Part shown: positions 1 through 40,500 of the stretch, piece after piece | How the letters are laid out: every line of letters begins with the position of its first letter | Numbering within the stretch: the first letter of the stretch is position 1 | From: Octopus sinensis | Lineage: Eukaryota | Direction of reading: 5' to 3' | Assembly (NCBI RefSeq): GCF_006345805.1 | Contig: NC_043021.1 | Span: 3,534,001 to 3,598,000 of the forward strand | DNA: 64,000 nucleotides | Notes under the pieces: model-generated | Databases searched by the model: none | What the model saw: only the letters and a program-made list of their open reading frames with translations | What the model was told of the DNA's origin: nothing | Program-made: the position numbers and the translations under genes

Positions 1-1121
1 GTCTGAGATTGCCCTTTTTATAATACTAAACCACCTTTATAATCCTTTGGCGTTCAGATTACCCTATCAAATGTAATGCATGTTTATTTACATTGTTTTC
101 AGTTAATCATGCATTATCTCATAGCTTCAAGGTTTTGACTCTATGATTTCTTTATTCTTAGAATGGCATTATAGGATAGATGCAAGGGGCTGTATCTGGC
201 TGGTTGACCATAAAACAGATAGACTATTTAGGCCAGATATGGCTAGTTTAACCTTTTAGCATTTAAACTGGCCATATCCGGCTAAAAGTATTCTGCCTGT
301 TTTATGTTCAAACTGGCCAGGTCTGGTCTCTCACACCAACCCTACAATATCATCTTTAAAATTAACAGCTACCTCATCGAAATCTCCTAGCTACAAGATA
401 ATGCATGATTAGTTCAAAACAATGTGGATAAAAACGGATTATTTTTGGCAGAATAATGTGAACACTAAAGGGTAAATTCTGAAGGGTTAAATAAAATCTT
501 TATTTAAATTATAATTTTTAGAACCTTTTATGTTCTAAACAACCAAGTTAATAATAACTGTTGTATTGCAAAACACTTCCACTATCATTATTTTTAAGCT
601 TTATTGAAACAGATGTGCAAAGTATGTTATTAGAAATATGATAATAAAATAATTTAATTCACATTAGTTTTGACACTCTGTATAGCTGTTAGGTAAAACC
701 TCACTAACAATAGTTTTTCCTACCCCATATTTTGTCTTCCCCTGTTTTGAAGTGCTAGCAAGGTTGTATTAAGAATGTTGCATCCCATCCACACAGTTCT
801 GGGTTCAGCCCCATTGTACGACTGAAAGAATCCCGTTATGTGTGTGTGTGTGCGTGCATGTATGTTCTTGTTTTGATTTTTACATCATAGCTGTAAATTG
901 AGTTCCAATGTTCTGCAAAGGACATGCCCTGGATAATATCACCTTGCTTGGAAACAAGTGAGGGTTGGTATTAGGAAAGGGGATCTGACCATGGAAAATC
1001 TGCCTCAGTAAACTCATCCAACCCATGCAAGCATGGGAAAGTGAATTTTAAACTGACAACAGTAATCATGTATATCAATATTTTGTCTTTTTTTTTTTGA
1101 TGAAAAAAAACCGTAGCCTCA

Positions 1122-1423
1122 GTGCCGGTGGCACGTAAAAAGTACCATCCGATCATGGCCGTTGCCAGCTTTGTCTGGTCTCCGTGCCGGTGGAACGTAA
1201 AAAGCACCATCCGATCGTGGCCATTTGCCAGCCTCGTCTGGCACATAAAAAGCACCCACTACACTCATGGAGTGGTTGACGTTAGGAAGGACATCCAGCT
1301 GTAGAAACACTGCCAGATCAGACTGGAGCCTGGTGCAGCCTTCTGGCTTCCCAGACCCCAGTTGAACCGTCCAACCCATGCTAGCATGGAAAGCGGACGT
1401 TAAATGATGATGATGATGATGAT
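1122..1423 (+). mobile_element. Family C retroposon-like repeat with (GAT)n tail and 5' tandem subrepeats
   Basis: ggcacgtaaaaagcacc subrepeats, aggaagggcatccagctgtagaaac, ccaacccatgctagcatgg, (gat)n; copies at 1850-2131, 10625-10945 (-), 26857-27056, 41785-42005 (-) and 43926-44231 (-). Confidence 0.85.
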
Positions 1424-3135
1424 TCACTTTCATATAACAGCTTAAAAATCTGCTTGAGAGAGAGAGAGACTGGAATGCTTGAACACAACACAACTGGTTT
1501 CTACTTCTTGGGGACAGAAGTGTGGTTGTGTGATGCTCATGCAATTTCAAACATAAATGTGAAATTGCTAGCTGAGAAATGAAGTCAGGTTGCACACTCT
1601 ACACATGCCTCTCTCGCCTCTTTATTTCTCATGTAACTTAATCATATCCAATGGCAGGTAAAGAGTGTGTATAATCTGGAACAAATTCAAAAACGCTTTG
1701 CTTTCAGGTTTGCTCTTTGTCTTTCTCAAATCAACTGAAAACATATCTTTATAGTAGTGTACTTCAAAAGTTGCAGAAGCTAAGGTGGTTAGGGTGTTTT
1801 AGTCCCCAGGCAAAACTATGATTAAAGGGCATTTCACTCCATGATCTTTTGTAAAAAGCACCATCCGAACGTGGCCAATGCCAGCGCCGTCTTTACTGGC
1901 TTCTGTGCCGGGGCACGTAAAAAGCATCAACCGATCGTGGCCGCTGCCAGACTCCCCTGGCATGTAAAAAGCACCCACTACACTCATGGAGTGGTTGGCA
2001 TTAGAAAGGGCATCCAGCTGTAGAAACACTGCCAGATCAGACTGGAGCCTGGTGCAGCCTCCTGGCTTCCCAGACCTCGTCCAACCCGTGCTAGCACGGA
2101 AGACAAATGTTAAACGATGATGATGATGATGTGTATATATCAGAGACTGCATTATATAACACATCCCTCAAGGAAGATTTGGTTGTTTTTCTTGAACCCC
2201 TTGGTGGCTGGGAATAGTTAGCCTCAGCTCCTGTCAAACCATCCAACCCATGCCAGCATGGAAGGTGGATGTTAAGTGATGATGATGAAGGTAACTGTGT
2301 GATAAGAGGTGGACAATTGAAGGCATGTGTTTGTGGTTAGAGGTAAACTTCAAAACACTGAGGAAGAGAATTATGATAAATGAGGATATTGCAAATGTTT
2401 TAGATATCCAGCTGATATTAAGGTCGATGTTTTTTTGTTTTTTTTTTCTTCATATTTTGACTTTTTTTGCATGACTTGTTGACAGAAATGTTTCACAGTT
2501 GGATACCTTTCAGAATTAGGATAAATAAAAAGGAATAAAACTATACAAAAAACAGTTTGAGGATGAGATAGTATCATTCTCAAGCTGCTATTTATTAATG
2601 AAAAGACAAACTTAGTCAATTGTCATGTGATTGTATGTGTTCGTTTGTTATACAATATAGTTCATATCAACATTTCTTCATTTTAATTAGTTGCTAATTA
2701 CAACTGTATAGAAATTGCTGTTGAATAAAAGCATGTGTGCTTTTTAAATTAGTATTTAAGGTAATGTTATGTGCTCCATGGATTTTATTTTAAGCTTTTT
2801 CTGATACATGAGTTTGTTATTATTAAGGCGGCCACCTGGCAGAATCATTAGCACGTTGGGTAAAATGCTTGGCGGCATTTCATCCGTCTTTACATTCTGA
2901 GTTCAAATTCCGCTGAGGTCGACTTTGCCTTTCATCCTTTTGGGGGTCGATGAAATAAGTACCAGTGTAACTCTGGGGTTGATGTAATTGACAAGGCCCC
3001 TCCCTATAGCAGAAAAGATTATTATTATTAAGGTGGCAAACTGGCAGAACTGTTAGTACTACACAGAGCAAAATGTTTAGCCGCGTTTCATCCATCTCTT
3101 AAGCGTAATACTTAATCATTTACATTTAATGTGAA

Positions 3136-3467: not shown

Positions 3468-6166
3468 CCGAACATTGTTTTAAGTTAATCAAGCATTATC
3501 TTGTAGCTTCAAGACTTTGATGGTGTGATTATTTTTTAGAACGACATTGTAGGGTAGGTGTGAGAAATCAATTTTCTGGCAGGTTTGAACATAAAACAAG
3601 AATATTTGGGCTGGATATGGTTAGTTCAAATACTAAAGGGTTGATAGAACATTGGGCCAATGTGTAATTGGCAGTGATATCAGGAATGGCTGTCTGAATA
3701 AAGCCAAAAGATAAGTGTTGTTTACCTGTGAGGGAGTAGATCAGTCTCGACATCACCTTGGGAGATGCAGAAGGTCTGGCATGAGAGCAGTGGTGGATCT
3801 GGTTGGTTCTATGCATGATCTTGTCTCTGGGATCACTAACTTGGAATGGCACCAGCCAAATCAAGCAAGAGCATGAAGCCAGCCAGCCAGCCAAGAGAGC
3901 AGATCAGTGCTTACTTATTAGTGAAGCAGACTGAGGCAAGCAGAAGCAATATCTTGCTTCTCAAGAGCACTATTAATGACTGCAAGTAAGATTCTGAAAT
4001 TGTGCATAACTTGTGCAGTCACCAGTCTTTATTTATTTATTACTATTTTGTATATATATATATATATATATATATGTATTTTACCACTTACTGTTCAGTG
4101 CATTGAAATAGGAGTGTAGCCAGGTAAGTTGAGGAAGGCAATTACGTGTCTTGCTTAACGAGTGCATACTACTGGTTAGGAAATGTTGTTATAGTCCGGG
4201 AAATATAATTTTAGCATTTTTCAAATTGTGAATGAAAAATCCTAAAGAATTCATCATCATCATCATCGTTTAACGTCCGTTCTCCATGCTAGCATGGGTT
4301 GGATGGTTCGACCGGGGATCTGGGAAGCCAGAAGGCTGCCCCAGGCTCCAGTCTTATCTGGCAATGTTTCTACAGCTGGATGCCCTTCCTAACGCCAAAA
4401 CATATTTCAGTTTCCATCTACCAAATCCACTCACGAGGCTTTGGTCGGCCCGAGGCTATAGAATACACTTGCCCAAGGTGCCACGCAGTGGGACTGAACC
4501 CGGAACCATGTGTTGATAAACTACTTGCCACACAGCCACTCCTGCGCGTATGAAAAATAGCAATGGTGATTATTGCAATCTGATTCTTCTGTTTTACTTC
4601 TTTCTTTAACAAATTAGTATCAACTTTATTGCTTTAATCTGTATTTCCATACTGGAATATGTTGGATGGCTCTCTAGGATAGCATCAAGGATCATTCTTG
4701 TGGAATCTTATCTTATCTTGGTCTTCTAATGTTGATTATTATTTAACATGACCTGGGATACAGCTGGGGGAATTAAGATATCGGCATACACTCTGTCATC
4801 TTGCACTTTTTAAGACCAATTGAATCAAAGAAAAAAAATCCTTACTTGCAAAACCTGTAAGGATTAGTTGAAGGAAGGGTATCTGGCTATAAAATAGTCT
4901 CAAATAAGATTGCATGGAAAACGCATGAACTTCAATTTTTGTTATATCTGTGTGTGTGTTTTTTCATTTTCTTTTTATTTAAAATTTTTTAATTTTTTAA
5001 TTTTTCCCCTGGTAATAGAGAAGTTTGTATCTGAAACAATGCTATTATTGTTCCTCGAAATATCATACCTTAACTCCTTGACCCACTCCTGTTTTCCTTA
5101 ACCTTACTCTGAACTGAAATTCACCCATGTCCAAGTCTCCATTCAGGTTCACCATTCATTCCATTCTCATCTCTGTCTGTCACTCTCCATTCACATTCTT
5201 GCGAACCCAAACACTCACCTAGCTGTCCTTGATTCTCTGTGTCTGTACCCTGAGGGTATGCCCTGACACTTCCTTTTTTCCTACCCCTCTCTCTAATACT
5301 TTAACCTCTCAACATTTGATACAAAACCACCTCCTTTAATTCTGCACCCCTACCTAATCTGTCAAGGGATTTTGTCTTGTAAGTTATTTGGTGACCCTCA
5401 CTTGTGCAGGTACCACAAGGGAAAAGTATCCAATACACCCTGTTAAGTGGTTGGCATTAGGAAGGCACTCAGCCATAGAAACCCTTCCAAAGTATGATTT
5501 GGAGCTCAGTGGAGCTCTCCAGATACTTGGCTCCTGTTAAACTGTCCAATCTATGCCAGCACGGAATGTGGATGTTGAATGATAACTTTTGTAAGTCAAT
5601 GTAATCTCATTTTGCAGACAGGTTAATTGAGTGAGACAACTGGAATTTTGCTTTTTTTGTCTGAGTTAGTGTGGTGAAGAGCTTGAATTTTTCATTTCTG
5701 TATTAATGGTCCAACATCTCAACCCAATTTGCGTTTAGTAAAATTAATTGGAAATGGTAGATTTCATAGTTAACAATTTAATTACTGTTCTGTTGAATGC
5801 ATAATGATTATAACATCTGACATCAAAGTGGATTTATTGAAGTATTCAGCTATCTTGTGTGTTTGAGGTCAGTTTGCTGGCATTGTATGTTTACTTAAGC
5901 TATCTTTGCGATAGTTTTAGCTACTATCTTAGGTTAGCTTTTAAATGCAGTGACACCTCTGTAGTCATGCTAACGATATAAAGTAGTGTGCATGAAACTA
6001 CAACATTGTATGCTCTGTTAGAAGGTGAGGAATAACAGAACACAAAGTGTCAGAAGAAATGGCACTAAGCATTTTGTCCCAAGTACTAAAATAGCTATGA
6101 AGGGAGCTTCAATGTGGTCACTTGACTTACTAGAATTAAGAGTTAATTCTGTAGCAAATCATACCG

Positions 6167-10624: not shown

Positions 10625-10945
10625 TTCATCATCATCATCGTTTAACGTCCGTTCTCCATGCTAGCATGGGTTGGACGGTTCGACCGGGGATCTGGGAAGC
10701 CAGAAGGCTGCACCAGGCTCCAGTCTTATCTGGCAATGTTTCTACAGCTGGATGCCCTTCCTAACACCAACCACTCCGTGAGTGTAGTGGGTGCTTTTTA
10801 CGTGCCACCTGCACTGGTGCCAGGCGAGGCTGGCAACGGCCACGGTCGGATTGGTGCATTTTACGTGCCACCGTCACGGAAGCCAGTCGGGGCGGCACTG
10901 GCATTGGCCACGATTCGGATGGTGCTTTTTACGTGCCACTGGCAC
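10625..10945 (-). mobile_element. Family C repeat
   Basis: Reverse complement of the 1122 element. Confidence 0.85.
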
Positions 10946-12042
10946 TAGTATATTTCACTTATATATAGTTGATGCTCTTGAGAAAGGAATGAGGTTCCAT
11001 AACCATACGTGTTTATGAAGGTAATCAATATTTTGTTCTAGAGAATAAAGCTTACCAAAAATAGGTCACCGACTGAGAAGTTCGGTTCAGCTAATTCTTA
11101 ACCTTTTAGCTGCTGATCTAGATATTTGTTCAAAAAACTCTACAATGGGTTCTTGGGCAAAATTCCCTCTCCTCATACATGCTCAAAAATTTTTTCCCCC
11201 AAAATGTTTGTACCTGTAGATCTTTGTTTTGTGACTTGGTAACACAAATGAATGGCTAGGGCTGGTGCTGTTATTGTGACATTTGTGCATCATCATCATC
11301 TAAACCATTAGTGACTGCAATGCTATGCAAACTCTTATCAATTGGTGCAGAACCATTTTCGCTTTCCAAATCGCTCTCTTACTAACGGTTCGCTCCTTAT
11401 TGAAGTCTAATATTCGATCTATTGCCTGATCAGCTGATAGTTTTCTCCAGACTTTTTTTTTTTTTTTTTTTTTTTGTGATTTAAATCTGCAAAACATGGG
11501 AAAAATTTCACCCAAATCCACAAGCTTACTTCCCCTTATAAGAGCCATAGGTCATATGAATCAAGGTCTTTGATTGGTCAGAAGGTTGCTAGGTGATTTG
11601 TTTATAAACAAGGACAGTTAACAGTTGTTAGATCTGCTGCTCATATCGTGAGCACTTCAAAACATTGTGGCTGATAATTCAGCCACTTATGTTCAGAGAA
11701 TTAAAGAGCAGACATCTTAAATGGAGCAAGAGTTTTCAAAATAGAGATTCCACATTGGATTTTTTTCAGAATTGTGTAAGATTTTAGTTACAATTTTCAT
11801 AAACATCGTATTTATTGATGGGATGATTTAATTTTAATATTTGCTTGAATTCTTTAGAATATCGTAGAGTCGTCCTACATACATATAAATATATATATGT
11901 GTATATATATATATATATATATAAGTAGATGAGTGTATTTTTACCTTGTTAACAATTAACACGGAAAAAATAAATAAATAGTTACCAGGTCAGCAAAAAT
12001 CTCACAAGTAAAAATGTCTTATTGACGAGTTTCGTTTTTTTC

Positions 12043-12128
12043 ACTTTCCTGAGGAGAAGATTGCATTGTTTATACCATTTATTCTTTTGAATAGTATCAG
12101 TGGAATTTTCGAAACATGTGTCGAAAGT
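12043..12128 (+). ncRNA. Type I hammerhead ribozyme with extended stem II
   Basis: P1 ACTTTC/GAAAGT; core CTGAGGA; P2 GAAGATT/AATTTTC extended by CATTG/CAGTG, ATAC/GTAT and TATTC-TTTT-GAATA; GAAA; short P3 CATGTG; GUC triplet, predicted cut after 12122. Confidence 0.85.
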
Positions 12129-12171
12129 AAAAATATTTGATTACACTTGCGTTAACTCCATTTTTTTTATT

Positions 12172-12222
<51 letters not shown>

Positions 12223-15764: not shown

Positions 15765-16148
15765 CACATAGACCTTGACATATGGGAGGGTCTACTGAAG
15801 TGATGGGTACAGCACATAGACCTTGACATATGGGAGGGTCTACTGAAGTGATGGGTACAGTACATAGACCTTGACATATGGGAGGGTCTACTGAAGTGAT
15901 GGGTACAGCACATAGACCTTGACATATGGGAGGGTCTACTGAAGTGATGGGTACAGCACATAGACCTTGACATATGGGAGGGTCTACTGAAGTGATGGGT
16001 ACAGCACATAGACCTTGACATATTGGAGGGTCTACTGAAGTGATGGGTACAGTACATAGACCTTGACATATGGGAGGGTCTACTGAAGTGATGGGTACAG
16101 CACATAGACCTTGACATATGGGAGGGTCTACTGAAGTGATGGGTACAG
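15765..16148. repeat. 48-bp minisatellite, 8 copies
   Basis: Unit cacatagaccttgacatatgggagggtctactgaagtgatgggtacag; 384 bp = 8 x 48. Confidence 0.97.
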
Positions 16149-16854
16149 CCCCTCCTAATTAAACCTTAAAAAGAAATGTATTAGTCAAGCTAAATTGGCA
16201 GTAAGTTGTTTGTAGTAGCAGTAGAGCAAAGGAGATAGGGGTTGATCTGAGACTGATCTGTGCCTCACAAAATACAAGGTAGATTTGAGACAGGTGTAAC
16301 ATTGACTAATAAACTTTTTCAGGTAGATAACTGCTTGAAGCACATATTGCTGATTGAAAGGAAACTGTAGTGGGGAAGAATCTGAGGGGAATGTAAGTTT
16401 GATGCATAATATAGATAACAGGTGGAGGAGGGGTGAGTTTTATTGATAAATATGGAATACAGTCAACAAGTTTAGTGGTGGTAGATAAAATTTTAACAGC
16501 ATTAGAAGACATCACATTTCATTACACTGAATCAAAATTTGGTACCATTCTGTGTGTGTGTGTGTGTGTATGTTTAGTGGGGGTTGAAGTTTTGACACTA
16601 CTTGACAAATTCTCCTATTAATTACTTATAGGAACACTATATTTTGTAATGCAATCATAATATACGACAGAATATAGTAAATGCTTTATAAGTCAATACT
16701 GTGTCCTACTGTGTTAGCAGTGCTATTAAATCACCTGTTTAAAATTACCTCTGGGAATTTTTCTATAGAGATTATAACCATGCACTGATTTATTACAATG
16801 TTTTGTATTTGAATATGTCTAATGTAGTTGATTGTAGATGGGAAAATAGGTAAT

Positions 16855-17841: not shown

Positions 17842-19509
17842 ATTGTAATTGTTTCTTTTTTTGTCATTCAAATTCCTTGCTGAAAGGTCTTCAGCTTCTC
17901 ACAAATACACAAATAAAACTTTAGTTTCAAGTGTTTTATTATTTGTCTATCTTTAAATCTGTTTTGGCAATTAGAAGTAAAAGATAAGCACAGTATCTGG
18001 AGTTTGTGGGGGCGATGACACATATCCTCTGTTAAAATTATTGATGGATTTTGTTTTATTGTGATAGTAAAATCATTTGTTCCTGTTTTCTATAAACTGA
18101 CAAAATATATGGGGTGGTTGACCCTGGCTTTTGTAGAATTCAAGTTGGCTAGAAATCTTACAGGTTAGAATAAAAGTCTATTGCTATTAAACTCCACTAA
18201 TGAGAACTAGATTCTATTTCATATTAACTTGATCCCAATAGAACCTGACGGTATTGTATCTTCAGTGAGATAAACTGAGGTAAGGTTATGATCATATCAT
18301 TTAATGCCTGTGTTCCATTTTGGCATCGTTTAACAGGATCCGATGGGCCCAAGGACTGCACTCTAGTGGTCTTTTGGCTTGGCTTCTACAGCCTGATGTC
18401 CTCCTTGATACCAACTATTTTACAGTTTGTACTGGGTGTTTTTCTTTTTTCTTTAGTGTCATCAGCACTAGTGAGGTTGCCGTGAGTGCCCAGTTGAGAG
18501 GGGGGATTTTATACTAGGAGAATAAGGGACTTCCAACATTAATGAGGTCACTATGCACCTTGCAAGCTATCCAATACAATAAAAATGTCTGAGAGAGGCC
18601 ACATGACTTTTAGAGAAGAGTGGCTTTCGCTCGGCAGATATATAGTCTTAACATTTGCAGAGAATCATCATCATCATCATCATCATTTAACATCCGCTTT
18701 CCATGCTAGCATGGGTTGGACGGTTCAACTGGGGTCTGGGAAGCCAGAAGGCTGCACCAGACCCAGTCTGATCTGGCCTGGTGCAATCTTATATTTTATT
18801 GAATTGACACTGTGTTACTTTATAAACTTCCCAAATGAACAAAGCACAAAAATCAATTCATCTGATTAGAGGATCAAGAACAAGGAGATCAAACCTTAAC
18901 TCCATATTCGACAGTTGTATACTCAGAAATATACGCAGGTCAAACAATCGGTGAGTTTTGATTTCAGTGTTCTTGAAACATCTAATCAAATTAGTTTATT
19001 TAGCTTTCATCCATTTGGGTTAGGCTAGGGTTTTATAACGAGAAATATCAGTAACATTGTGTTCAGCCAATAAACCATACTCTTTACTTACAACGAAATG
19101 AATGAAAAATTAACCTTGTATCCAGGCAAAAGAAATTATTCTTTATTTTTTGTGTAGGCTTGGCTGTGTTTTCTTTACCAATCAAAAGCTCTTCATTCTG
19201 TATTCCATTACTTGTACATTGTTGCATATGACTAAGAGACATTGTTCTCAAATGGCCCAGTTCTCCTCATTGTAAATATGTACTGTGGGCAGTGATAACA
19301 ATGGGAGCTATCTATAATTGCACTAATGAGTTCAAATTCTGCTGTGAATGTCACTTTATGCTGGAGAGCTTCCCTTATAGCAATTTGTTCTAGATACATC
19401 ACATGAACGGGCTGCTTCTTATAACCTGATAATTACGGGACTTGTTACTTGCTGGTTGCCTTTGTGAGGCTTGATCACTCTTGATTGGTCTTTGTGATAT
19501 AGTTTTATA

Positions 19510-26468: not shown

Positions 26469-28906
26469 GGCAATGTAGAATTATCTCAGTCATATCCAGC
26501 CTGAATATTCTACCTGTTTTATGCTCAAACTGGCCAGATCTGGCCTTTCACACCGAACCTAGACACTGTCATTTCTAAAAATTATCAAAGTATCAAAATC
26601 GTGAAGCTATGGAATAATGTATGATTAATTCAAAACAATATGAATAAATGAGCATTACAATTGAGTGTAATTTGAATGCCAGAGTTAAATGTCTTGTCTT
26701 GAAGTATAAATAATAGCAGATTTGAACTCTCAGTGCAAATTGCCACTGAAAATATTTAGATTGACTGGTTGGTTTCTTGCAAGTTCCATCTGATAAGCTC
26801 TTTATTTGTTTTTTTATTATTTCACAACTCTCCAATCAGTTATAGTAATTATGCAGGTGGCACGTAAAAAGCACCCACTACACTCACAGACGGAGTGGTT
26901 GGCGTTAGGAAGGGCATCCAGCTGTAGAAACACTGCCAGATCAGACTGGAGCCTGGTGCAGCCTCCTGGCTTCCCAGATCCCCGGTCGAACCGTCCAACC
27001 CATGCTAGCATGGAGAACGGACGTTAAACGATGATGATGATGATGATGATGATGCTCTAGAATTAATTGACTAGAATTAAGCTGCTTAGAAGTTGGGTGG
27101 GAGATTGTTTTCTTCAATTTCAAACTTGTGAGTTTTGTGACAGATTTACTCAGTATCTCCATATTTTGACATAAAAGAAGCAAAATATTTATGGATGTTG
27201 CATAAATGAATATACCAAGCATTGGTAATTCAACAGGACCAAAGCTGAGTAAATTTTTGGCAAAAATTTTTCCAATGCCACAAGCAGGAAATCCTCTTCA
27301 CGAATTATTGTCGTTTGTAGCACAAAAGTTTTGATTGATTGTTGAATTAACTCCCACTACACTTTCCAGGAAAGAATCACTCTGCTTGTTTCTGCCACTC
27401 CGAGGAAAGTATTATTGATCTCAGAACAGTATTGGAAGTGATTACTGCTTTAAACGCCTCTCTTTACAAGACACATAGGTTGCAGGTTTCCATGTTATTG
27501 GGTCGGTCACTTAAGAGGAAGGCAAGGTTGGATTAAGTGAAATCAGAAGCAGTAGCAGTATTTGCTGTTTGTTTACATTGTTGAAATGTCTTCACTCAAA
27601 CTTCCACCAAACAGCATATTCTCAATGATTCTGTCTCAGCATTGAAGCTGTTAAGCATGAACCATTGTTGTCAGCTGTAAAGGGTGTGGTGGAGAAATCT
27701 GTAACATTTCTGGAGGTAAAGCCAATGCTTTTAGTCTCCCTCTACTCTTCTTAGGTTTCCTTCACAATGAATGGTAGCAGAAAAAAAAAAAAAAGGGAAA
27801 AAATAATAAAAGAAATTGATAATTGGATAAAATCTGTCAGTGGTGTTAGTTTTCCTTTTGGCAATTGAGAACAGAGTGCCAGAGCTAAATACATTTAAAT
27901 TTACTCCTTGGTTCTGACCTCAAATCTTGCATCACATGCTTCACGGTTCAAGAAAATAAAAAAAATTAAAAAAAGGATAATATATTGAGTTAATTCAAAT
28001 AACTGTTTTCTCTTCTGTATCATTTCTATTTTTTAATGGTATTTGCTGCCTTGATATGCTGTCTGTAAAAGTTGGTGCATTCTCAATGCAATGTTTCCAG
28101 ACTTATTTCTCTGGGACATATTTCATCATCCTTTCTTAGACACCTTGTCATATGTAATAATTGATAATGTACTAACTTAATCAACATGGAGAAGGCAGAT
28201 ACAATGCTCTTCATTAAGACATGAAGGGTTTTTTTTTTTTTTTAAACCTTCCTATTATCTCAGTATTGATTATTTGAAAATTTTATTTTAAAATACTTTG
28301 GACTAAGTGCCTGCAAAAGTTTGAACTGTATATTAAATAATCATTAATCCTCTTCTTAACCATATCTGAATGGATTTAATTTAGAAAAAAAAAAGCTTGT
28401 TTTCTTGGTCAAGTTTCTGTTTGTATATACAAAGATAGGGTATGGGTAAAGACCCCCTTCAGTCATGAATGACCATGGGATTGCACCTAAAAACTTCCCC
28501 TCTGAGGCACAGGTCTTTGGCAAGGTTGTTTATGGAAGTCTAGCGATTGCCCATGCATACCAGTCTCCAAGGGAAAGGCAAAAGGCCAATCCAACTTGGC
28601 ACCAGTTGCAACTCATTTCTTCAGTTGAGTAAACTGGAGCAATGTGAAAGAAAGTGTCTTACTCAAGAACATAATACACAACCCAATCTGGGAATCAAAC
28701 TCTCTACCTCGTGATTGCGAGCCCAACGCTCTAACCACTGGGCCATGTGCCTTCATATATATATATATATCATCATCATTTAGCATCCGTTTTCCATGCT
28801 AGCATGGGTTGGACGGTTTAACTGGGGTCTGTGAAGCTGGAAGGCTTCATCAGGCCCAGTCAGATTTGGCAGTGTTTCTATGGCTGGATGCCCTTCCTAA
28901 CGCCAA

Positions 28907-32680: not shown

Positions 32681-35117
32681 ACTTATTTTTATAAATAATC
32701 TTTTCTAATTTTGACACAAGGCCAGCAATTTTAAGGGATAAGGAAGTCAATTACACTTCATCTGATATTTTATCAACCCCAAAAGAATGAGAAGCAAAGT
32801 TGACTGTGGCAGCGTTTGAACCCAGAACATAACGAGCCGGAAGAAATGCTGCGAAGCGTTTCATCTGGTGTAGTAATGGTTTTGCTAGCTTACTGTCTAA
32901 ACTTATTAAATATTGGTTTTAAATTTTGACACAAGGCCAGCAATTCTGTGGTAGAGTATTAGTCGATTACATTAACCTCAGTGTGCAACTGCTACTTATT
33001 TTATTGACCCCGAAGGGATGAAGGGCAAAGTCAACCTCAACAGAATTTGAACTCAGAACCTGAAGACAAACCGTTGCTAAGTATTTTGTCCTGTATGCTA
33101 ATGGTTCTGCCAGTTCACCTTAAATAATAAAGTTTCAAATTTTGGCACAAGGCTAGCAAGTTCAGTGGAGGGGGGTAAGTTGATCACATTGACCTCAGTG
33201 CATAACAGGTACTTGTCTTATTGACCTTGAAAGGATGAAAGGCAAAGTCGACCATGGTGGAATTTGATCTCAGATTGTAAAGACAGACAAAATGCTGCTA
33301 AGCATTTTGCCCAGTGTGCTATCAATTCTGCCTGCTCATAATAACAAGACATTGTTATTGACCATTCTTATCAACCGTAAATCTTTTAAGACTAACACTA
33401 AGGTTTTGAAATTTTCTTATCTTTATTTATCAAAAAGGTGACCGACACTACATTTTAAGCTGATTGCTTCTAATTACTTTTTTCTTCAACTTCTCAGCAA
33501 CCGCAAAACTTAATTGCTGTGACATTTCATACATGGAGGTGCTAGTTATAGAGTAGGACCTTTTCTTTTATTCATGTAATAATTATGTTTGTCTATATAA
33601 TAACTGTCTATTACATTGAACCACCTGGTTTATAGTTATTTTACCTGTATAATTGACTTTCATTTTGCTATTTTGTGAACAGCTGTACATTTTAAAATTG
33701 GTTTTCAATGCAAAAATATTCTAAGGATTTGTTCATATAACTTAATTTTCAAATCTAATCAAGCTAAGCTTATCTACAACACAAATAAGAATCAAAACCA
33801 GTTATTAAGAATAAGAACAAGCAGCATATTTCCCCCTGGAATCAAGAATAGTTCATTGAGTCTTGTTTTGTTGTTTTGAACATGTACTAGATAGAAATAG
33901 GTGTTGTGAAGACAGACAAGCACTAATAAAATAGGTTAATCTAAACTGGCTTTTAGATTAACCCAATTTATAGGTGCTGTTAGAATGGCATACATTTTAG
34001 CTGTTTCTAGTTTGTTTTTTTTTCTATGATTGGCCTACATATTTTCCTTTTGTTCCAGTTTTGAATATTAGTTTTATAAAAAGGCTTTGTTCATAAATTA
34101 CATTCGTCAGTCATGCTTGAAAATTAAAAGTGGTGATGTTAGACTCTTTTTTTTCTCCTTTTTTTTCTGTTTTGACACATGTTAATCTGCTGTCGATGCT
34201 TTTCGTTCACTTATTTCCATTTTATAAGGCTCAGAGATTTAAAATCAGCTGCAATTTTTTCTTCCTCAGACATGAGTTGTGCATGTTATTTATACACTCT
34301 GAATTGTATTAGAAGCATTGATATTTAGGAAGTATTTGTTCTTAAGAATCTGTATTTAGCAAGTTAGTTTGCTCTACAAATGATAAATGCACTGTGTAAT
34401 GTCCCCAGCAAAGACAGTCAACATCCAAAACGCAATCTACCTAGCTGTTATCAGTGACACTTTCATTTGCTTTTTGGGCCTGAAATCCCTCTCATTTGAG
34501 AAAATGGTTTCTCTTAAATGTTGAATCCTTTAGCATTTAAACCAGCCATTTCCAGCAAAAAATATTTTACGTGTTTTATGCTCTAACTGGCCTGATCCAG
34601 CCTCTTACACCTACTCTGCAGTGTCATTCTAAAGATAAGCAATCATTTGGTTGAAAGCTCACGGCTGTGAGATAATGCATGATTAATTCAAAACAATGTG
34701 AATAAATAAGCATTTCATTTGACTGAGTAACCTGAATGTGGAAGGGTTTAAATCATGAAAATTAAGATATTCTTTGGCATATCTCTTTGGGGTTTTTTTT
34801 TTTGTTTCTTTTGTGGCAGTGGAAGTAAAGAAAACTAAGAAAAAAAAATTTGTTCTCAATCTATTTACCATAATATACATAATTAAGCTACTTCTATTCT
34901 TTTACCTCTATAATGGCTAATTTATTTTATATATTGCATTGAATTTTTTAAAATTGTATGCGGAATTTTTTCTACCTTGAAACTGAATTGTATCAGAAAA
35001 CCAGTTATTTTAACATCTTATCTTAAACTTTTAGGACCACCATTATATATCTGTACCTAATGTTTAATACACTTTCTTTTATTGAGATACTAAAATGGAG
35101 TTTTGTATATTCAACAG

Positions 35118-35251
35118 ATCAATGGAACGACACAAACCCTACAGACTTAAAGCAATATGACAGAGATACGCTCTTGGGTTTGCAGAATGCTTCTGCCTCC
35201 TTGAGCAGGCCTGAAAATCTTCCAGATCTACCTGATGTTATTTTGTCTGCA
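35118..35251 (+). CDS. EIF4G: eIF4G exon with the eIF4E-binding motif ([23 protein letters not shown]...[12 protein letters not shown])
   Basis: caacag|atcaatgg to tctgca|gtaagt; phase 1 to 0; canonical and non-canonical 4E-binding segments. Confidence 0.93.
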
Positions 35252-37462
35252 GTAAGTAATTACTCTTTTCTTTCGAACGTTGCTTTTATCCCAATGTTGC
35301 TGGTATGATAACCGTGAGTTGCTTAAGTTTGGAGCCGACAACTTCATTTTAATTTCTAATTGCATCCTTTTCCACTCATGGGTTGCTGAAGGTAAGGAGA
35401 AACCACCTGTGTGTAACCTTGCTTCATACACATCGTGATAACACAGAAATGAATGTAAAAGGGTGAGGGGAAATGTTTGAAATAAAGGTAATAGTGGCTG
35501 TGAATATTAGAGACTTCAGTGATTTAGAGGAGTTGAAAGCGATGGGAAAGCAACGTGCTTAAGGCTATAAAGAGCACTTGTTTTCATCCAGATCTTTCTC
35601 CATGTGCATCAACAATTCTTAGATATTTGTTGAAAATGTTTGTTTTATTTTCAAATCTCCTTCATTTTTGCTGTTTGTATTCAGTCTCTTTACCAACAAC
35701 TATTTGCAGCCCCCCCCTCTCTCTTTCTCTCTCCCCACCCCACCCCATCACTTTATTGTTCCAACTCTCTACTCACTCAGCCGAGGTCGACTTTGCCTTT
35801 CATCCTTTCGGGGTCGATTAAATAAGTACCAGTTACGCACTGGGGTCGATATAATCGACTTAATCCGTTTGTCTGTCCTTGTTTGTCCTCTCTGTGTTTA
35901 GCCCCTTGTGGGTAGTAAAGAAATAGGTACTATCATCGGCCTCGACAACAACTTTACTTGCCTCAACAAATCTTCGCAAGCGCAGTTTATTGCCCAATGA
36001 TTAAAGAGTACTCTTAAATGGGCTGATTATGCTGCACTGGCATAGGCCACAGTTAAGGTCTCACTTGGCTTGCCCGGTTTCCTCAAGCGTAGCATATCTC
36101 CAAAAGGCATTGGTTGGGCCAGGGCTGCTGCACAGTGAGACTGAAACCAAAACATGTGGTTGCAAAGCCAGCTCCTTAGTCACACAGCTGTGCTGTTTTT
36201 TGTTTTTTCTATTTAATGATAGTTAATGATATACTCATGTTTAGAATATTGGGTGATGTTTCAAGTAATGTTGCCATGATATCTATTTCTTTATTACCCA
36301 CAAGGGGCTAAACACAGAGGGGACAAACAAGGACAGACATAGGTATTAAGTCGATTACATCGACCCCAGTGCGTAACTGCTACTTAATTTATCGATCCCG
36401 AAAGGATGAAAGGCAAAGTCGATCTCGGCGGAATTCGAACTCACAACGTAACGCAGACGAAATACCGCTAAGCATTTCGCCCGGTGTGCTAACGTTTCTG
36501 CCAGCTCACCATGATACCATTGTAACCAAGAATCTTACAGGACAAACTGAAATACAGTAATGCATTCAGTGAAGTTTACTGTTTCAGCTACCTTCATTGC
36601 TTGAGTTATGATTTTTGTTTCTTGTTATGGTTTCTATGGCTGGATGCCCTTCCTAAAACCAACCACTCCAAGAGTACAGTGGGTGCTTTTCGTGTGCCAG
36701 ACACGTAACTCTGGCATCGGCCATGACTATGATCTCACTTGGTTCAACAGGTCTTCTGAAAGCACAGTATATTGCCATAGGTCTTGGTTATTTGTCATTG
36801 TCTCCATGAGGCCCAATATTCGTAGGGTTCTATTTACATGCCACTAGCGCAGGTGCCAGTTAGGCGACACTGGTATCAGCCACAAAGGCGGCGAGCTGGC
36901 AGAAACGTTAGCAAGCTGGGCAAAATACTTAGCGCTATTTCGTCTGCCGCTACGTTCTGAGTTCAAATTCCGCCGAGGTCGACTTTGGCTTTCATCCTTT
37001 CGGGGTCGATTAAATAAGTACCAGTTACGCACTGGGGTCGGTGTAATCGACTTAATCCGTCTGTCTGTCCTTGTTTGTCCTCTCTGTGTTTAGCCCCTTG
37101 TGGGTAGTAAAGAAATAGGTATCAGCCACAACTGGAACCTGGTGCAGCTTACCCGTTTTCAGTTAAACTGGCCAACCCATGCCAACATGAAAAACAGCCG
37201 TTAAATGATGATTTAATGAAGTTTGGATTTACTTTAAAAAAAATGTTGTTTTATTATTCCCCCCACCACTTTTTTTCATGGACTTCTTTTTCTTTTATAG
37301 CCTTTAACTACTGTTGCTCCTGGAGTAGGAATACAAAGCAGTGGTATGACGATTGGTTTGGGAGGAGACAAAGGCATAAATACAGACTGGAGGAATGGCA
37401 ATGACCCGTTTATTCCATTCTATGTCAAGTCTGCACGATCGGTATGTAATGGTTGACTTTCT

Positions 37463-37504
<42 letters not shown>

Positions 37505-40500
37505 TCTTTTACTTGTTTCAGTCATTTGACTGCGGCCATGCTGGAGCACCGCCTTTTAATCGAGCAACTCGACCCCAGGACTTATTCTTTTGTAAGCCCA
37601 GTACTTATTCTATCGGTCTCTTTTGCCGAACCGCCAAGTAACGGGGACATAAACACACCAGCATCAGTTATCAAGCAATGCTAGGGGGACAAACACACAA
37701 ACACACACACGCATATATATATACATATATACGACGGGCTTCTTTCAGTTTCCGTCTACCAAATCCACTCATAAGGCTTTGGTCTGCCCGAGGCTATAGT
37801 AGAAGACACTTGCCCAAGGTGCCACGCAGTGGGACTGACCCCGGGACCATGTGGTTGGTAAACAAGTTACTTACCACACAGCCACTCCTGCATGCATAAT
37901 ATTAAAAATGTTGCAATCAGTTTTGGGAAATTTCAAATATATAATTTAATCGTGATATCTTATAATCTAATCATAGGTCTTTTTGGTGGGTCGGGGGCAT
38001 GGAATCGTATTAATTCAATATCGGCAAGGCAATGGTGTTCAGCAATATTAACAGATATTGCTCTGGTTTAAAATTTGTAAACAAGAATTATTAGAATATA
38101 GAATATTAGGGAAAAAAATTTATTACTCAAATTACCATAAGACTACCTGTAAAAAATTCTATACAAGTGAGTCTGCTGAAGATTTGACAGTGTTAGAATG
38201 TCCTGTGAAATGCAAGCTTTCAGAATGCTTAGGCATAAACTAGTCTTCGGCTGCAAGTACTCTGCAAACAATGTTGATAGCTGCAGTAGTAATATCTAAG
38301 GAATAATGGAACACTACCCTAGTGATTTCGTAATTGAACATAAAAGTATAATCCTTATGTTGATTATTGAAAATGCCGGAAATCTGGTTCAGCTTGTTGA
38401 TCATGCTACTGTTGTTAGCTTGTTTGCAAAGGCTTTATCCAAAGGCCTGGTGTATCTTGTTGCTGGCCCTACTGTTGCATGGGTTTTCTCAGCACTACAA
38501 GCCAATAAAAATCCTTATTAAATTTTACCATGACAAGTATCTACAACAATGAACTGTCTGTCTTCATGCTACAAAACCTGGAAAAGAGGAGCAACTGATG
38601 TCAAATATTTCGGCCTTCCTCTTTCTAACTCAGTGTTTCTCAACTGGATTCAATATGGCCCTTGAGGGTCAATACAAGATTTTGTTAAAACATATCTCCA
38701 ATAAATTAGTTGTACTTCTACAATACACAAAACATTTTAATAAATTATTTTTATATAATTTCTAATAATATTTAATTATAAAAATATGATTTTTTTTTTT
38801 AAAGTATCAAATGATTATGAGTGTCCACAAGTAAGATAGGAATCAAAAGGGGTCCATAGGCAAAAAACTGGTTGAGAAACTCTGGTCTCACCACTAGTTG
38901 CATCCAGTAATCACATAGTGCAACTAAATAGTTGGTGTGAGTTTTCTTTAGTGAGATGAGCATATGAATGAGTTTTAGTCTGTAGCTAACTACTTTTTAG
39001 CTGTATACTCCTTACTTTATTGTTTGTATTTACTCTTTTTTTTTTTTCTTACAAATTTCAGTCTGTCGGTGGTGTTACAAAAAGAGGTAGTCAACAAGGG
39101 AAGAAAGAAGTGAAAAACATTATCATTCAAATTCCAAAAGAAGTGAAGCTAAAGACCTGTGAGAATGCCTGGTTGCCGTCAGCAAAGAAACCGCAAAATA
39201 CAGTCGACGATAGTGGTGGTGTTGATGCTATTGTGAAGAGAGTGCGAAGTATACTTAATAAACTCACTCCTCAGAACTTTGAAACATTAGTAGATCAGAT
39301 GGAATTAATTCTTATTGATACTGAAGACAAACTTGGTGCTGTAACAGACCTTGTCTTTGAAAAGGTATGGTACCGTTATTGTCTTGATGCTAATAACTTT
39401 CTGTAAATGATATTGTCTTTAGATGTTCATATATATATGTGTGCAGCTATGGGTATGTAGTTGAGTTTTCTGCAGTCCAACAGCACAGCGCTTTGGGTAA
39501 GTGCTTCTTACTGTAGCCTCAAGCTGACCATAGCCTTGTGTGTGGATATGGAAACTAAAAGAAGCTTTTCATGTGCACACGCCTGCATATACACTTCTTA
39601 CTGCACGAAGTTTTGTCAGTGAACAGGTCACAGTTTCAAAGCAGCGAAAATATTTTGACACAAATTAAATTTAAATGTCTGTTCTTAAGTGCCTTATAAG
39701 CATCTTCCATGCTGCAATTGTTTATATATATATATTTGATTTGATCTGATCTAGTTTCAGCTCATGAGCTGTGGCCATGCTGGGGCACTGCCATTTGGTG
39801 TTGCTACATAATTTTACCTCACTAATTTTTTTTAGAAATTGACGTTTGGTGCATGAGGGAGTTTGATGCCGCTGCCCTCATCTGCACTTCCTGCTGTAAA
39901 GTTGGTTCATCTGGGACACTTGGCAGCAAGAGGTCTAGTTTCGTTTTGGAGACACATCCACCCCATGTAGGTCTCTCGGGGCCTTCAGGAGGATATTGAA
40001 GAGCTGTGAGCCTTTAAAGCCCAGGCTGTTGTAGTATCTTGTCTTATATCTTGATGGCAAAGTTGGAGTCTTTGGCACTATGCAGTGGTGCCCTGTTCTA
40101 GCATTAGTGTAACTCTCAATGCCAAAGTTTGGGACAAGTTCCTCTAGGATCTTCCAGATGTATATTATGACATAGCTTTCCTGTCTACACTCTAGGGAAT
40201 AGTCTCAATCTGTTGAGTCTTTTCCAGTAGGTTAAATGCTGCATAGAGACCATATTCTTTGTGTAGCTTCGTTTCCCAGGAAAGGAATTTTAGTCCTGTT
40301 ACTGAGTGTTAAGTCTTCTATTTCGTTTGGCTTTAAGTTCTGACTTCATCTGCCACTATGGTTTACTGTGCCCTTCATCCTTCTGGGTTTGGTAAGATAA
40401 GTTGAGCACTGGGTTCAATGTAACCAGTCTAGTCTCTTTCCCCCAAATTTCAGGCCCTTGTGCTTGTTGTAGAAAGGATAATTCATAGCTTTTTGAGTTC

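What the first reader, a model, noticed from the sequence alone, without database searches (positions are those of the whole stretch)
12043..12128. Intact type I hammerhead ribozyme with a long multi-segment stem II, on the eIF4G strand
Seen: ACTTTC(P1)-CTGAGGA-GAAGATT...AATTTTC(P2)-GAAA-CATGTG(P3)-TC-GAAAGT(P1'). Every catalytic core nucleotide (CUGANGA, GAAA, GUC) matches. P1 is a perfect 6 bp and extends by T5/A5 after a single C bulge. The 41 nt inside P2 fold further into CATTG/CAGTG, ATAC/GTAT and TATTC-UUUU-GAATA, so stem II is a ~55-nt interrupted hairpin instead of the usual short stem-loop. Known: type I hammerheads with very short stem III occur in Penelope-like elements and animal retrozymes and often cleave as dimers; intronic ribozymes are known in mammalian CPEB3 (HDV-like) and in amniote introns (hammerheads). 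Inference: if the eIF4G transcription unit starts upstream of 12 kb, this would cut the pre-mRNA co-transcriptionally after nt 12122, affecting long isoforms but not those from a more downstream promoter.
Basis: partly seen in the sequence, partly recalled or inferred. Interest (0 to 1): 0.88.

Follow-up and report, generated by a model that had tools for sequence, protein, structure and literature searches.

The report
Hammerhead ribozyme of a Penelope-like retrotransposon fragment
The hammerhead ribozyme motif is real, but it is one of 100 identical copies carried by a young Penelope-like retrotransposon and sits in a small dead fragment of it, so it is an ordinary transposon part and not a dedicated switch for the eIF4G gene.

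Summary
The sequence at 12043-12128 (+) matches a type I hammerhead: complete catalytic core, 6-bp helix I, 7-bp helix II with a 41-nt insert, 2-bp helix III and a GUC cleavage site ending at 12122. A descriptor scan found it once in the window and never in 19 Mb of simulated sequence.

It is not specific to this locus. The 86-nt motif has 100 perfect copies in the 2.72-Gb genome. [quoted passage not shown] It also lies about 200-280 nt upstream of the next ORF in partial tandems.

The unit is about 3 kb, flanked by (TA)n, and carries the DKT, CxxC and CxH motifs (RWK is seen only in relatives). These fit the published "Hydra" clade of Penelope-like elements, which carry canonical hammerheads.

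The window holds only a roughly 260-bp composite fragment between two (TA)n tracts: an inverted arm plus a 5'-truncated direct arm.

The long stem II is specific to this family. Its distal part shows no compensatory changes.

The eIF4G regulation idea has no support. The nearest recognisable exon lies 23 kb downstream, and helix III is too short for efficient monomer cleavage.

The parts
11879..11923 (.). Left (TA)n microsatellite flanking the insertion
   Evidence: Tandem Repeats Finder, period 2, 22.5 copies. Other copies of the element are also bounded by (TA)n.
11920..12012 (-). Inverted arm: reverse complement of the last ~95 nt of the element's 'long-end' module. That module is the segment that precedes the ORF in tandem copies, i.e. 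the 5'UTR part of the pLTR.
   Evidence: blastn of window 11920-12017 against L043 5022-4927 gives 90.8% on the minus strand. The same module appears in inverted or direct position in other loci.
12011..12180 (+). Direct arm: 5'-truncated 3' end of the element (the 'A module'), ending at TTATTCATA where (TA)n begins
   Evidence: 97.6% identical to L001 1482-1648 and 88% to L043 4707-4873. Other copies share this 3' end but start at many different 5' points.
12043..12128 (+). Type I hammerhead motif. Helix I 12043-12048/12123-12128; core CUGAGGA 12049-12055; helix II 12056-12062/12104-12110 with 41-nt insert 12063-12103; GAAA 12111-12114; helix III 12114-12115/12120-12121 with AUGU loop; predicted cleavage 3' of C12122.
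   Evidence: There are 100 perfect copies in the genome.
12173..12222 (.). Right (TA)n microsatellite flanking the insertion
   Evidence: Tandem Repeats Finder, period 2, 25.5 copies.

Best explanation
The motif is the hammerhead ribozyme of a young, very abundant Penelope-like retrotransposon (PLE). By its protein motifs, size and (TA)n targeting, the element fits the 'Hydra' clade of PLEs with a C-terminal endonuclease.

In full copies the unit is about 3 kb: a ~200-nt 5'UTR module, a 775-aa RT-endonuclease ORF, a 340-nt 3'UTR, and a 167-nt module holding the hammerhead. Partial tandems create pseudo-LTRs. In these the hammerhead lies ~200-280 nt upstream of the next ORF.

The window holds a dead-on-arrival composite insertion into a (TA)n tract. 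It consists of a ~95-nt inverted arm joined to a 170-nt 5'-truncated direct arm that happens to include the whole hammerhead. This architecture was shown here.

The following is inferred from the literature on PLE and retrozyme hammerheads, not shown here. In transcripts that carry two copies, the self-complementary ACAUGUGU of helix III lets two motifs pair into an active dimer. That dimer cuts after GUC and helps trim multimeric element RNA. A lone copy with a 2-bp helix III cleaves poorly.

Any effect on eIF4G would be an accidental by-product, and only if a + strand transcript crosses the site.
For: Copy number:
- 100 perfect copies of the 86-nt motif.
- 704 exact copies of a 27-mer covering four core variants.

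Insertion pattern:
- Copies share a constant 3' end next to (TA)n and have variable 5' truncation.
- The inverted-plus-direct composite also occurs at other loci, L105 and L106.

Link to the element:
- Longer copies are contiguous with an ORF. An intact 775-aa ORF is P0002.
- The AlphaFold model has pLDDT 84. Its best PDB fold matches are telomerase reverse transcriptases at E 5e-9.
- The ORF itself has the DKT, GIY..YIG, CxxC and CxH motifs. RWK and the CxCX5C linker appear only in the consensus of its relatives.
- These match the Hydra-clade description: under 3 kb, (TA)n insertion, canonical hammerheads (PMC8557442 sec. 11).

Ribozyme evidence:
- Distant relatives carry hammerheads between tandem ORFs.
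- Divergent family copies keep the core and show one compensatory UA->CG pair in helix I.
- The helix III sequence is self-complementary, -6 kcal/mol as a duplex.
Against: - No Rfam hammerhead model matches.
- Pfam recognises neither the RT nor the GIY-YIG domain in the ORF.
- The CxCX5C linker cysteines typical of Hydra-clade relatives are absent in this family.
- About half of the family's copies, including all three copies with a full-length open frame (778-854 aa) that I found, carry CCGAAGA. That is U4->C in the catalytic core. The canonical hammerhead is therefore evidently not needed for proliferation.
- Published in vitro work also found cleavage dispensable for PLE insertion (PMC11167929).
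- No cleavage assay or RNA data exist here.
Confidence: 0.9

Rival explanations
1. Gene-regulatory ribozyme: an intronic or 5' hammerhead that cuts long eIF4G pre-mRNA isoforms co-transcriptionally after 12122.
For: It is on the same strand as the eIF4G exons. The core is intact and helices I and II are predicted to be stable.
Against: - It is one of 100 identical copies spread over nearly all chromosomes.
- It sits in a truncated transposon fragment.
- It lies 23 kb upstream of the first recognisable exon, and no upstream exon or CpG island was found.
- Helix III pairing probability is only 0.03 as a monomer.
- There is no second copy in the window to form a dimer.
Confidence: 0.04
2. Non-LTR retrozyme: a short non-autonomous tandem repeat whose hammerheads excise a small circular RNA, and not part of an autonomous Penelope-like element.
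For: - It has animal type I hammerhead architecture with a short palindromic helix III.
- A different hammerhead family in this genome does sit in a 431-bp tandem unit with (TA)n.
- All 20 canonical-core copies examined were 5'-truncated, so they may be mobilised in trans.
Against: - The motif is contiguous with the RT-endonuclease ORF and its 3'UTR in longer copies, with about 3-kb spacing in tandems.
- There is no short tandem array of this motif in the window or among the loci examined.
Confidence: 0.05
3. Functionless relic: the hammerhead-like sequence is carried along by the element but no longer cleaves in vivo, even within the transposon.
For: - In the first 100 of 704 27-mer matches, 55 have U4->C.
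- The three copies with a full-length open frame (778-854 aa) are U4C and also carry changes at C11.1 and C17.
- The distal stem II changes only break pairs.
- PLE hammerheads show low activity in vitro, and cleavage is dispensable for insertion in vitro.
Against: - The canonical core is retained in divergent copies (L095, L100) together with a compensatory change in helix I and GU<->GC changes in helix II.
- Distant relatives and other families in the same genome keep canonical cores.
- The U4C lineages keep a cleavable GUA triplet and improve the helix III palindrome to ACAUAUGU.
Confidence: 0.25

Closest known systems
Hammerheads in the pseudo-LTRs of Penelope-like elements (Cervera and de la Pena 2014, PMC4209133)
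   Same: - Type I motif located in the repeated UTR/pLTR next to an RT plus GIY-YIG ORF.
- G10.1-C11.1 pair and a 6-bp helix I.
- Helix III of 2 bp with a self-complementary sequence that allows dimers.
- Many identical copies in a genome under recent invasion (they report 97 of 130 identical in D. virilis; here 100 perfect copies).
   Different: - Helix II is a 55-nt interrupted hairpin, not 4-8 bp. This is probably why Rfam models miss it.
- It has a full canonical core and not the 'minimal' variant.
- About half of the family has a U4C core.
Hydra clade of C-terminal EN+ Penelope-like elements (Craig et al. 2021, PMC8557442)
   Same: - Unit about 3 kb with a single ORF.
- DKT motif and a GIY-YIG domain without CCHH.
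- CxxC and CxH around the conserved E and N.
- Insertion into (TA)n.
- Canonical hammerhead present.
- Partial tandems and inverted 5'-truncated copies.
   Different: - The CxCX5C linker cysteines seen in relatives are lost in this family.
- RWK reads RWL.
- The two alternative 3' ends lie about 150 nt apart, whereas the published tail is 30-40 bp.
- Membership rests on motifs and fold, not on a phylogeny.
Animal non-LTR retrozymes (Cervera and de la Pena 2020, PMC7229834; Li et al. 2026 bioRxiv 10.64898/2026.07.22.740005)
   Same: The same kind of type I hammerhead acting as a dimer. These elements are proposed to be non-autonomous derivatives of PLE pLTRs.
   Different: Retrozymes are short tandem units (about 170-400 nt) without an ORF. 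This motif is linked to a 775-aa ORF and repeats at about 3 kb.
Conserved intronic hammerheads of amniotes (Rfam HH9/HH10) and the CPEB3 ribozyme
   Same: A self-cleaving motif on the sense strand near or within a host gene.
   Different: Those are single-copy and orthologously conserved. This one is a multi-copy transposon part, and there is no evidence that it lies inside the transcript.

Membership tests
Hammerhead ribozyme, type I | Conserved core C3 U4 G5 A6 N7 G8 A9 / G12 A13 A14 / A15.1-U16.1 / H17 | tested here: met
   CUGAGGA, GAAA, an A-U pair and GUC with C17 at 12122. It is the only descriptor hit in the window, with none in 19 Mb of simulated sequence.
Hammerhead ribozyme, type I | Three helices around the core, with helix I open | tested here: met
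   Helix I is 6 bp plus a 5-bp extension. Helix II is 7 bp plus its extension. Helix III is 2 bp. The hammerhead fold lies within 1.3 kcal/mol of the MFE.
Hammerhead ribozyme, type I | Match to a curated covariance model (Rfam RF00163 and related) | tested here: not met
   No hammerhead family matched at gathering score or at E<=10. RF00163 does find 7 other hammerheads in this genome. The 41-nt insert in helix II is the likely reason for the miss.
Hammerhead ribozyme, type I | Helices supported by compensatory changes | tested here: inconclusive
   One UA->CG double change in helix I (2 of 7 variants) and GU<->GC changes in basal helix II. The distal stem II shows only pair-breaking changes. 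There are just 7 related sequences. Across families in the same genome, helices I and II differ completely while the core and helix III are the same.
Hammerhead ribozyme, type I | Mg2+-dependent site-specific self-cleavage | not testable with these tools
   This needs in vitro transcription of monomer and dimer constructs.
PLE pseudo-LTR hammerhead | Located in the repeated UTR/pLTR flanking an RT-endonuclease ORF | tested here: met
   L043 reads EN-3'UTR-HHR module-5'UTR-ORF-3'UTR-HHR module-5'UTR-(TA)n. The ORF is P0002.
PLE pseudo-LTR hammerhead | Short helix III with a palindromic sequence that permits a dimeric ribozyme | tested here: met
   ACAUGUGU is self-complementary (8 bp with 2 G.U, -6.0 kcal/mol). 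Monomer helix III probability is 0.03.
Penelope-like element, Hydra clade | Reverse transcriptase closest to telomerase RT | tested here: met
   Foldseek top hits are TERT structures 3du5, 6usr and 6zdq at E about 5e-9, from a model with pLDDT 84. Pfam and PDB sequence searches see nothing.
Penelope-like element, Hydra clade | C-terminal GIY-YIG endonuclease lacking CCHH, with CxxC and CxH near the conserved E and N | tested here: inconclusive
   Motifs present: SIYQC..FYIGST..R..H, CLLC..E and N..E..CKH, all conserved in relatives. The model topology is beta-beta-alpha-alpha-beta-alpha. There is a weak 'endonuclease' PHROG hit in the closest relative. There is no Pfam GIY-YIG hit and no separate fold search of the domain.
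Penelope-like element, Hydra clade | DKT instead of DKG; RWK motif | tested here: met
   P0002 has SDKTGN and RWL. The consensus of its relatives has ADKT and RWK.
Penelope-like element, Hydra clade | CxCX5C linker motif | tested here: not met
   Present in relatives as CNCRxxxxC, but P0002 has no cysteines at those positions.
Penelope-like element, Hydra clade | Short unit (about 3 kb or less), insertion into (TA)n, pLTR tandems and inverted 5'-truncated copies | tested here: met
Non-LTR retrozyme | Short ORF-less tandem units, each with a hammerhead | tested here: not met
   There is a single copy in the window. Direct repeats of this motif are about 1.1 kb (a duplicated composite) or 3 kb apart and are linked to the ORF.
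Host-gene intronic regulatory ribozyme | Single-copy, locus-specific element inside the transcription unit | tested here: not met
   There are 100 identical copies. Its position relative to the eIF4G transcription start is unknown.

The most novel reading that the evidence does not exclude
Within one young PLE family, canonical-core and U4->C-core hammerhead lineages have both amplified to hundreds of copies. The only copies found with a full-length open frame are U4C. All 20 canonical-core copies examined are 5'-truncated.

This leaves two possibilities. Either the hammerhead is dispensable for PLE proliferation in vivo, with canonical-core copies riding in trans. Or a C4 core with an improved helix III palindrome and a 55-nt helix II still cleaves, which would be an unrecognised active hammerhead variant.
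Probability: 0.25. Interest if true: 0.45.

Novelty: new member of a known kind. Interest (0 to 1): 0.25.

Why it matters
The main value is as a correct annotation. It stops a transposon-borne ribozyme from being read as an eIF4G regulator.

It also documents a very abundant Hydra-clade PLE family in a mollusc-like 2.7-Gb genome. Neither standard library sees it: Rfam misses the hammerhead and Pfam misses the protein.

The family offers a natural series of hammerhead variants: canonical, N7 change, U4C, C11.1U, GUA, a perfect helix III palindrome, and a long helix II. Together with copy numbers, this series could be used to ask whether PLE hammerheads matter for transposition, a question the literature leaves open.

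Tried and rejected
- Rfam at gathering score and at E<=10: no hammerhead hit. Rfam on relatives' loci found only microsatellite noise.
- Pfam on the ORFs gave only a PKD-like hit in an upstream read-through of one copy. PDB sequence and profile searches found nothing relevant.
- My strict descriptor missed the relatives' hammerheads because they have U10.1.U11.1. I found them by eye.
- The Argonauta hians relative (L108) showed no convincing hammerhead in its 3'UTR.
- Attempts to place the eIF4G 5' end failed. A motif search for an N-terminal exon and a CpG o/e scan gave nothing decisive, and the CpG peaks mostly coincide with interspersed repeats.
- A chance origin was rejected because of the copy number and the link to the ORF.
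- A DNA transposon or MITE with terminal inverted repeats was considered because of the inverted arm. It was rejected because the arm junctions vary between loci, the 5' truncation is variable, and an RT ORF is present.

Full report
**1. The observation**

- Helix I: ACTTTC/GAAAGT.
- Core: CUGAGGA.
- Helix II: GAAGAUU/AAUUUUC, closed by G10.1-C11.1, with 41 nt inside.
- GAAA.
- Helix III: 2 bp (A15.1-U16.1 and C-G) with an AUGU loop.
- GUC, with C17 at 12122.

RNAfold reproduces helix I with its C bulge and U5/A5 extension. It also reproduces the interrupted stem II. In the ensemble, helix I has pair probabilities of about 0.8, helix II 0.84-0.94 and helix III about 0.03. The fully hammerhead-constrained fold costs only 1.3 kcal/mol more than the MFE.

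A descriptor of my own found this site as the only hit on either strand of the window. It found none in 300 simulated 64-kb sequences.

Rfam does not recognise it, either at gathering score or at E<=10 on the local 600 bases. The same Hammerhead_1 model does find seven other hammerheads in this genome. These have a short helix II and the same GAAACAUGUGUC segment. The miss is therefore best explained by the 41-nt insert.

**2. It is a repeat**

- The 111 bases around the motif have at least 41 identical copies.
- The exact 86-nt motif has 100 copies, 45 forward and 55 reverse, on nearly all large contigs. The reversed-pattern control gives 0.
- A 27-mer allowing four core variants has 704 exact copies.

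Copies share a sharp 3' end (TTATTCATA followed by (TA)n) and start at many different 5' positions. This is the signature of target-primed reverse transcription.

**3. What the repeat is**

In longer copies the motif lies about 370 nt downstream of an ORF. A search with the ORF's C-terminal 135 aa gave 16,592 first-look candidates. All 150 that were scored are at least 92% identical.

One copy (L043) has an intact 775-aa ORF, P0002. Its layout is a partial tandem: EN-3'UTR-hammerhead module-5'UTR module-ORF-3'UTR-hammerhead module-5'UTR module-(TA)n. This is a pseudo-LTR arrangement with a unit of about 3.0 kb.

Pfam and PDB sequence searches see no domain. However, 87 relatives of 26-40% identity exist. 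An AlphaFold model built on their alignment has pLDDT 84. Its best fold matches are telomerase reverse transcriptases, followed by bacterial DRT, retron and group II intron RTs.

The ORF carries:
- FDISNFY, PMGSSDSAQIADL and YRDD.
- A DKT motif.
- A C-terminal SIYQC..FYIGST..R..H segment followed by CLLC..E..N..E..CKH.

The consensus of the relatives adds RWK and a CNCRxxxxC linker.

These features match point by point the 'Hydra' clade of Penelope-like elements described by Craig et al. 2021 (PMC8557442, section 11). That clade has a size of about 3 kb, insertion into (TA)n, tandem and inverted copies, and canonical hammerheads. It was reported from Cnidaria, Mollusca, Echinodermata and Arthropoda.

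There are two departures. The linker cysteines are missing in this family, and I did not build a phylogeny. The only relative with a source-given name is from the octopod Argonauta hians.

**4. The window copy**

Only one fragment of the element is in the window. It lies between two (TA)n tracts at 11879-11923 and 12173-12222.

It has two arms:
- An inverted arm at about 11920-12012. This is the reverse complement of the last ~95 nt of the 5'UTR or 'long-end' module.
- A direct arm at 12011-12180. This is the last 170 nt of the unit up to the 'short end', and it contains the complete hammerhead.

The same inverted-plus-direct composite, with different junctions, occurs at other loci (L105, L106). 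PLE literature describes exactly such inverted 5'-truncated copies. It also describes two alternative RT initiation sites that give optional 'tails' (PMC11167929). The two 3' ends seen here, short and long and about 150 nt apart, may be a larger version of that. This last point is inference.

**5. Variation of the hammerhead within the family**

I sampled 72 copies downstream of endonuclease hits. They form a graded series:
- CUGAGGA, the window type.
- CUGAAGA.
- CCGAAGA (U4->C).
- Lineages that additionally have C17->A (GUA), helix III CAUAUG (a perfect ACAUAUGU palindrome), C11.1->U, an extra A in stem II, and a helix I mismatch.

Two more divergent copies (L095, L100) have CUGAAGA and GUC. 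They also show a compensatory UA->CG change in helix I and a GU->GC change in helix II. The canonical core therefore looks ancestral.

In the first 100 of the 704 27-mer matches I counted 33 CUGAGGA, 11 CUGAAGA, 55 CCGAAGA and 1 CCGAGGA.

The three copies with a full-length open frame (778 aa in L043 and L044; 854 aa in L042 with an upstream read-through) are all of the most derived U4C type. All 20 canonical-core copies whose upstream sequence I could fetch are 5'-truncated.

Classic mutagenesis shows that U4 substitutions strongly impair cleavage; this is from my own knowledge. If so, the element evidently proliferates without a canonical core. That agrees with published doubts about the role of PLE hammerheads.

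**6. The long stem II**

It is present in every copy of the family, including the divergent ones. It is absent from hammerheads of distant Hydra-type relatives, where helix II is 13-18 nt with U10.1.U11.1. It is also absent from other hammerhead families in this genome.

Within the family, the basal 12 pairs show only pairing-compatible changes. The distal 9 pairs show only pair-breaking changes. With seven related sequences this is weak evidence.

**7. The eIF4G idea**

eIF4G exons are on the + strand:
- The eIF4E-binding motif at 35027-35308.
- The start of MIF4G at 38990-39406.
- MA3-like sequence at 52040-52330.
- The W2 end at 57994-58212.

I found no exon, CpG island or other mark of the gene's 5' end upstream of 35 kb. 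Whether the site is transcribed is therefore unknown.

A lone motif with a 2-bp helix III, no partner in the window and 99 identical siblings elsewhere is not a plausible dedicated regulator. At most it is an accidental, weak cis element.

**8. Verdict**

This is a real, canonical-core hammerhead motif, correctly read. It belongs to a truncated Penelope-like retrotransposon insertion.

It is a new member of a known kind (PLE pseudo-LTR hammerheads) with an unusually long helix II. Standard libraries cannot see it. Interest is modest and lies in the natural variant series and the abundance of the family, not in eIF4G.

Noticed in passing
window 35027-58212 (+): Exons of an eIF4G homologue on the + strand. 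They include the eIF4E-binding motif [11 protein letters not shown] (35027-35308), the start of MIF4G (38990-39406), further exons at 44.3, 46.2-46.6, 47.7-48.0 and 49.1-49.6 kb, an MA3-like exon (52040-52330) and the W2 C-terminus ending in EEDDD (57994-58212).
   Followed up: partly
window 971-1598(-), 1799-2167(-), 4274-4553(+), 10646-11018(+), 18546-18869(+), 26941-27297(-), 41885-42161(+), 43963-44560(+): A highly repeated interspersed element. Its spurious ORFs read ...[40 protein letters not shown].... It is also present near many of the fetched loci and accounts for most CpG-rich spots in the window. It is probably a SINE-like repeat.
   Followed up: no
window 15765-16149: A 48-bp minisatellite with 8 copies at 98% identity. 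On the minus strand it gives repetitive ORFs (PITSVDPPICQGLCAV...).
   Followed up: partly
G000:C16:25146363-25146839 (L026/L027); also L021, L024, L025: A second hammerhead family that Rfam does recognise: GUAC-CUGAAGA-GACCC AGAA UGGGUC-GAAACAUGUGUC-GUAC. It has the same helix III and cleavage triplet as the window motif but a short helix II. In L026 it sits in a 431-bp unit repeated twice in tandem with (TA)n, which looks like a retrozyme or a pLTR of another PLE family.
   Followed up: partly
L042 2255-4816(-) (G000:C20:16423000-16430000): The 854-aa open frame of this copy begins upstream of the element's Met. It reads through a segment matching the PKD domain of KIAA0319-like proteins (Pfam E 3.9e-5; PDB 6nz0 E 7.7e-8). 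The copy is either inserted next to, or has captured, a host exon-like fragment. A long perfect palindrome lies just upstream.
   Followed up: no
L043 (G000:C1:79875000-79884000) and the family genome-wide: About half of the family's hammerheads have U4->C (CCGAAGA). This includes all copies found with a full-length open frame. These lineages also changed helix III to a perfect palindrome (ACAUAUGU) and the cleavage triplet to GUA.
   Followed up: partly
window 53654-54028(-), 50154-50468(-), 39935-40204(-): ORF fragments that look like C-terminal parts of LINE-type reverse transcriptases, for example ...[21 protein letters not shown].... They lie on the minus strand between eIF4G exons.
   Followed up: no
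L108 5330-5470 (Argonauta hians, BAAFZT010000013.1): Downstream of the related ORF, beyond a (TA)n tract, is a hammerhead-like stretch: CUGACGA ... GAAA-CAAUUG-UU, with a palindromic helix III and a long helix II. Only 2 bp of helix I are visible. It may be a degenerate or unusual hammerhead of another element.
   Followed up: no
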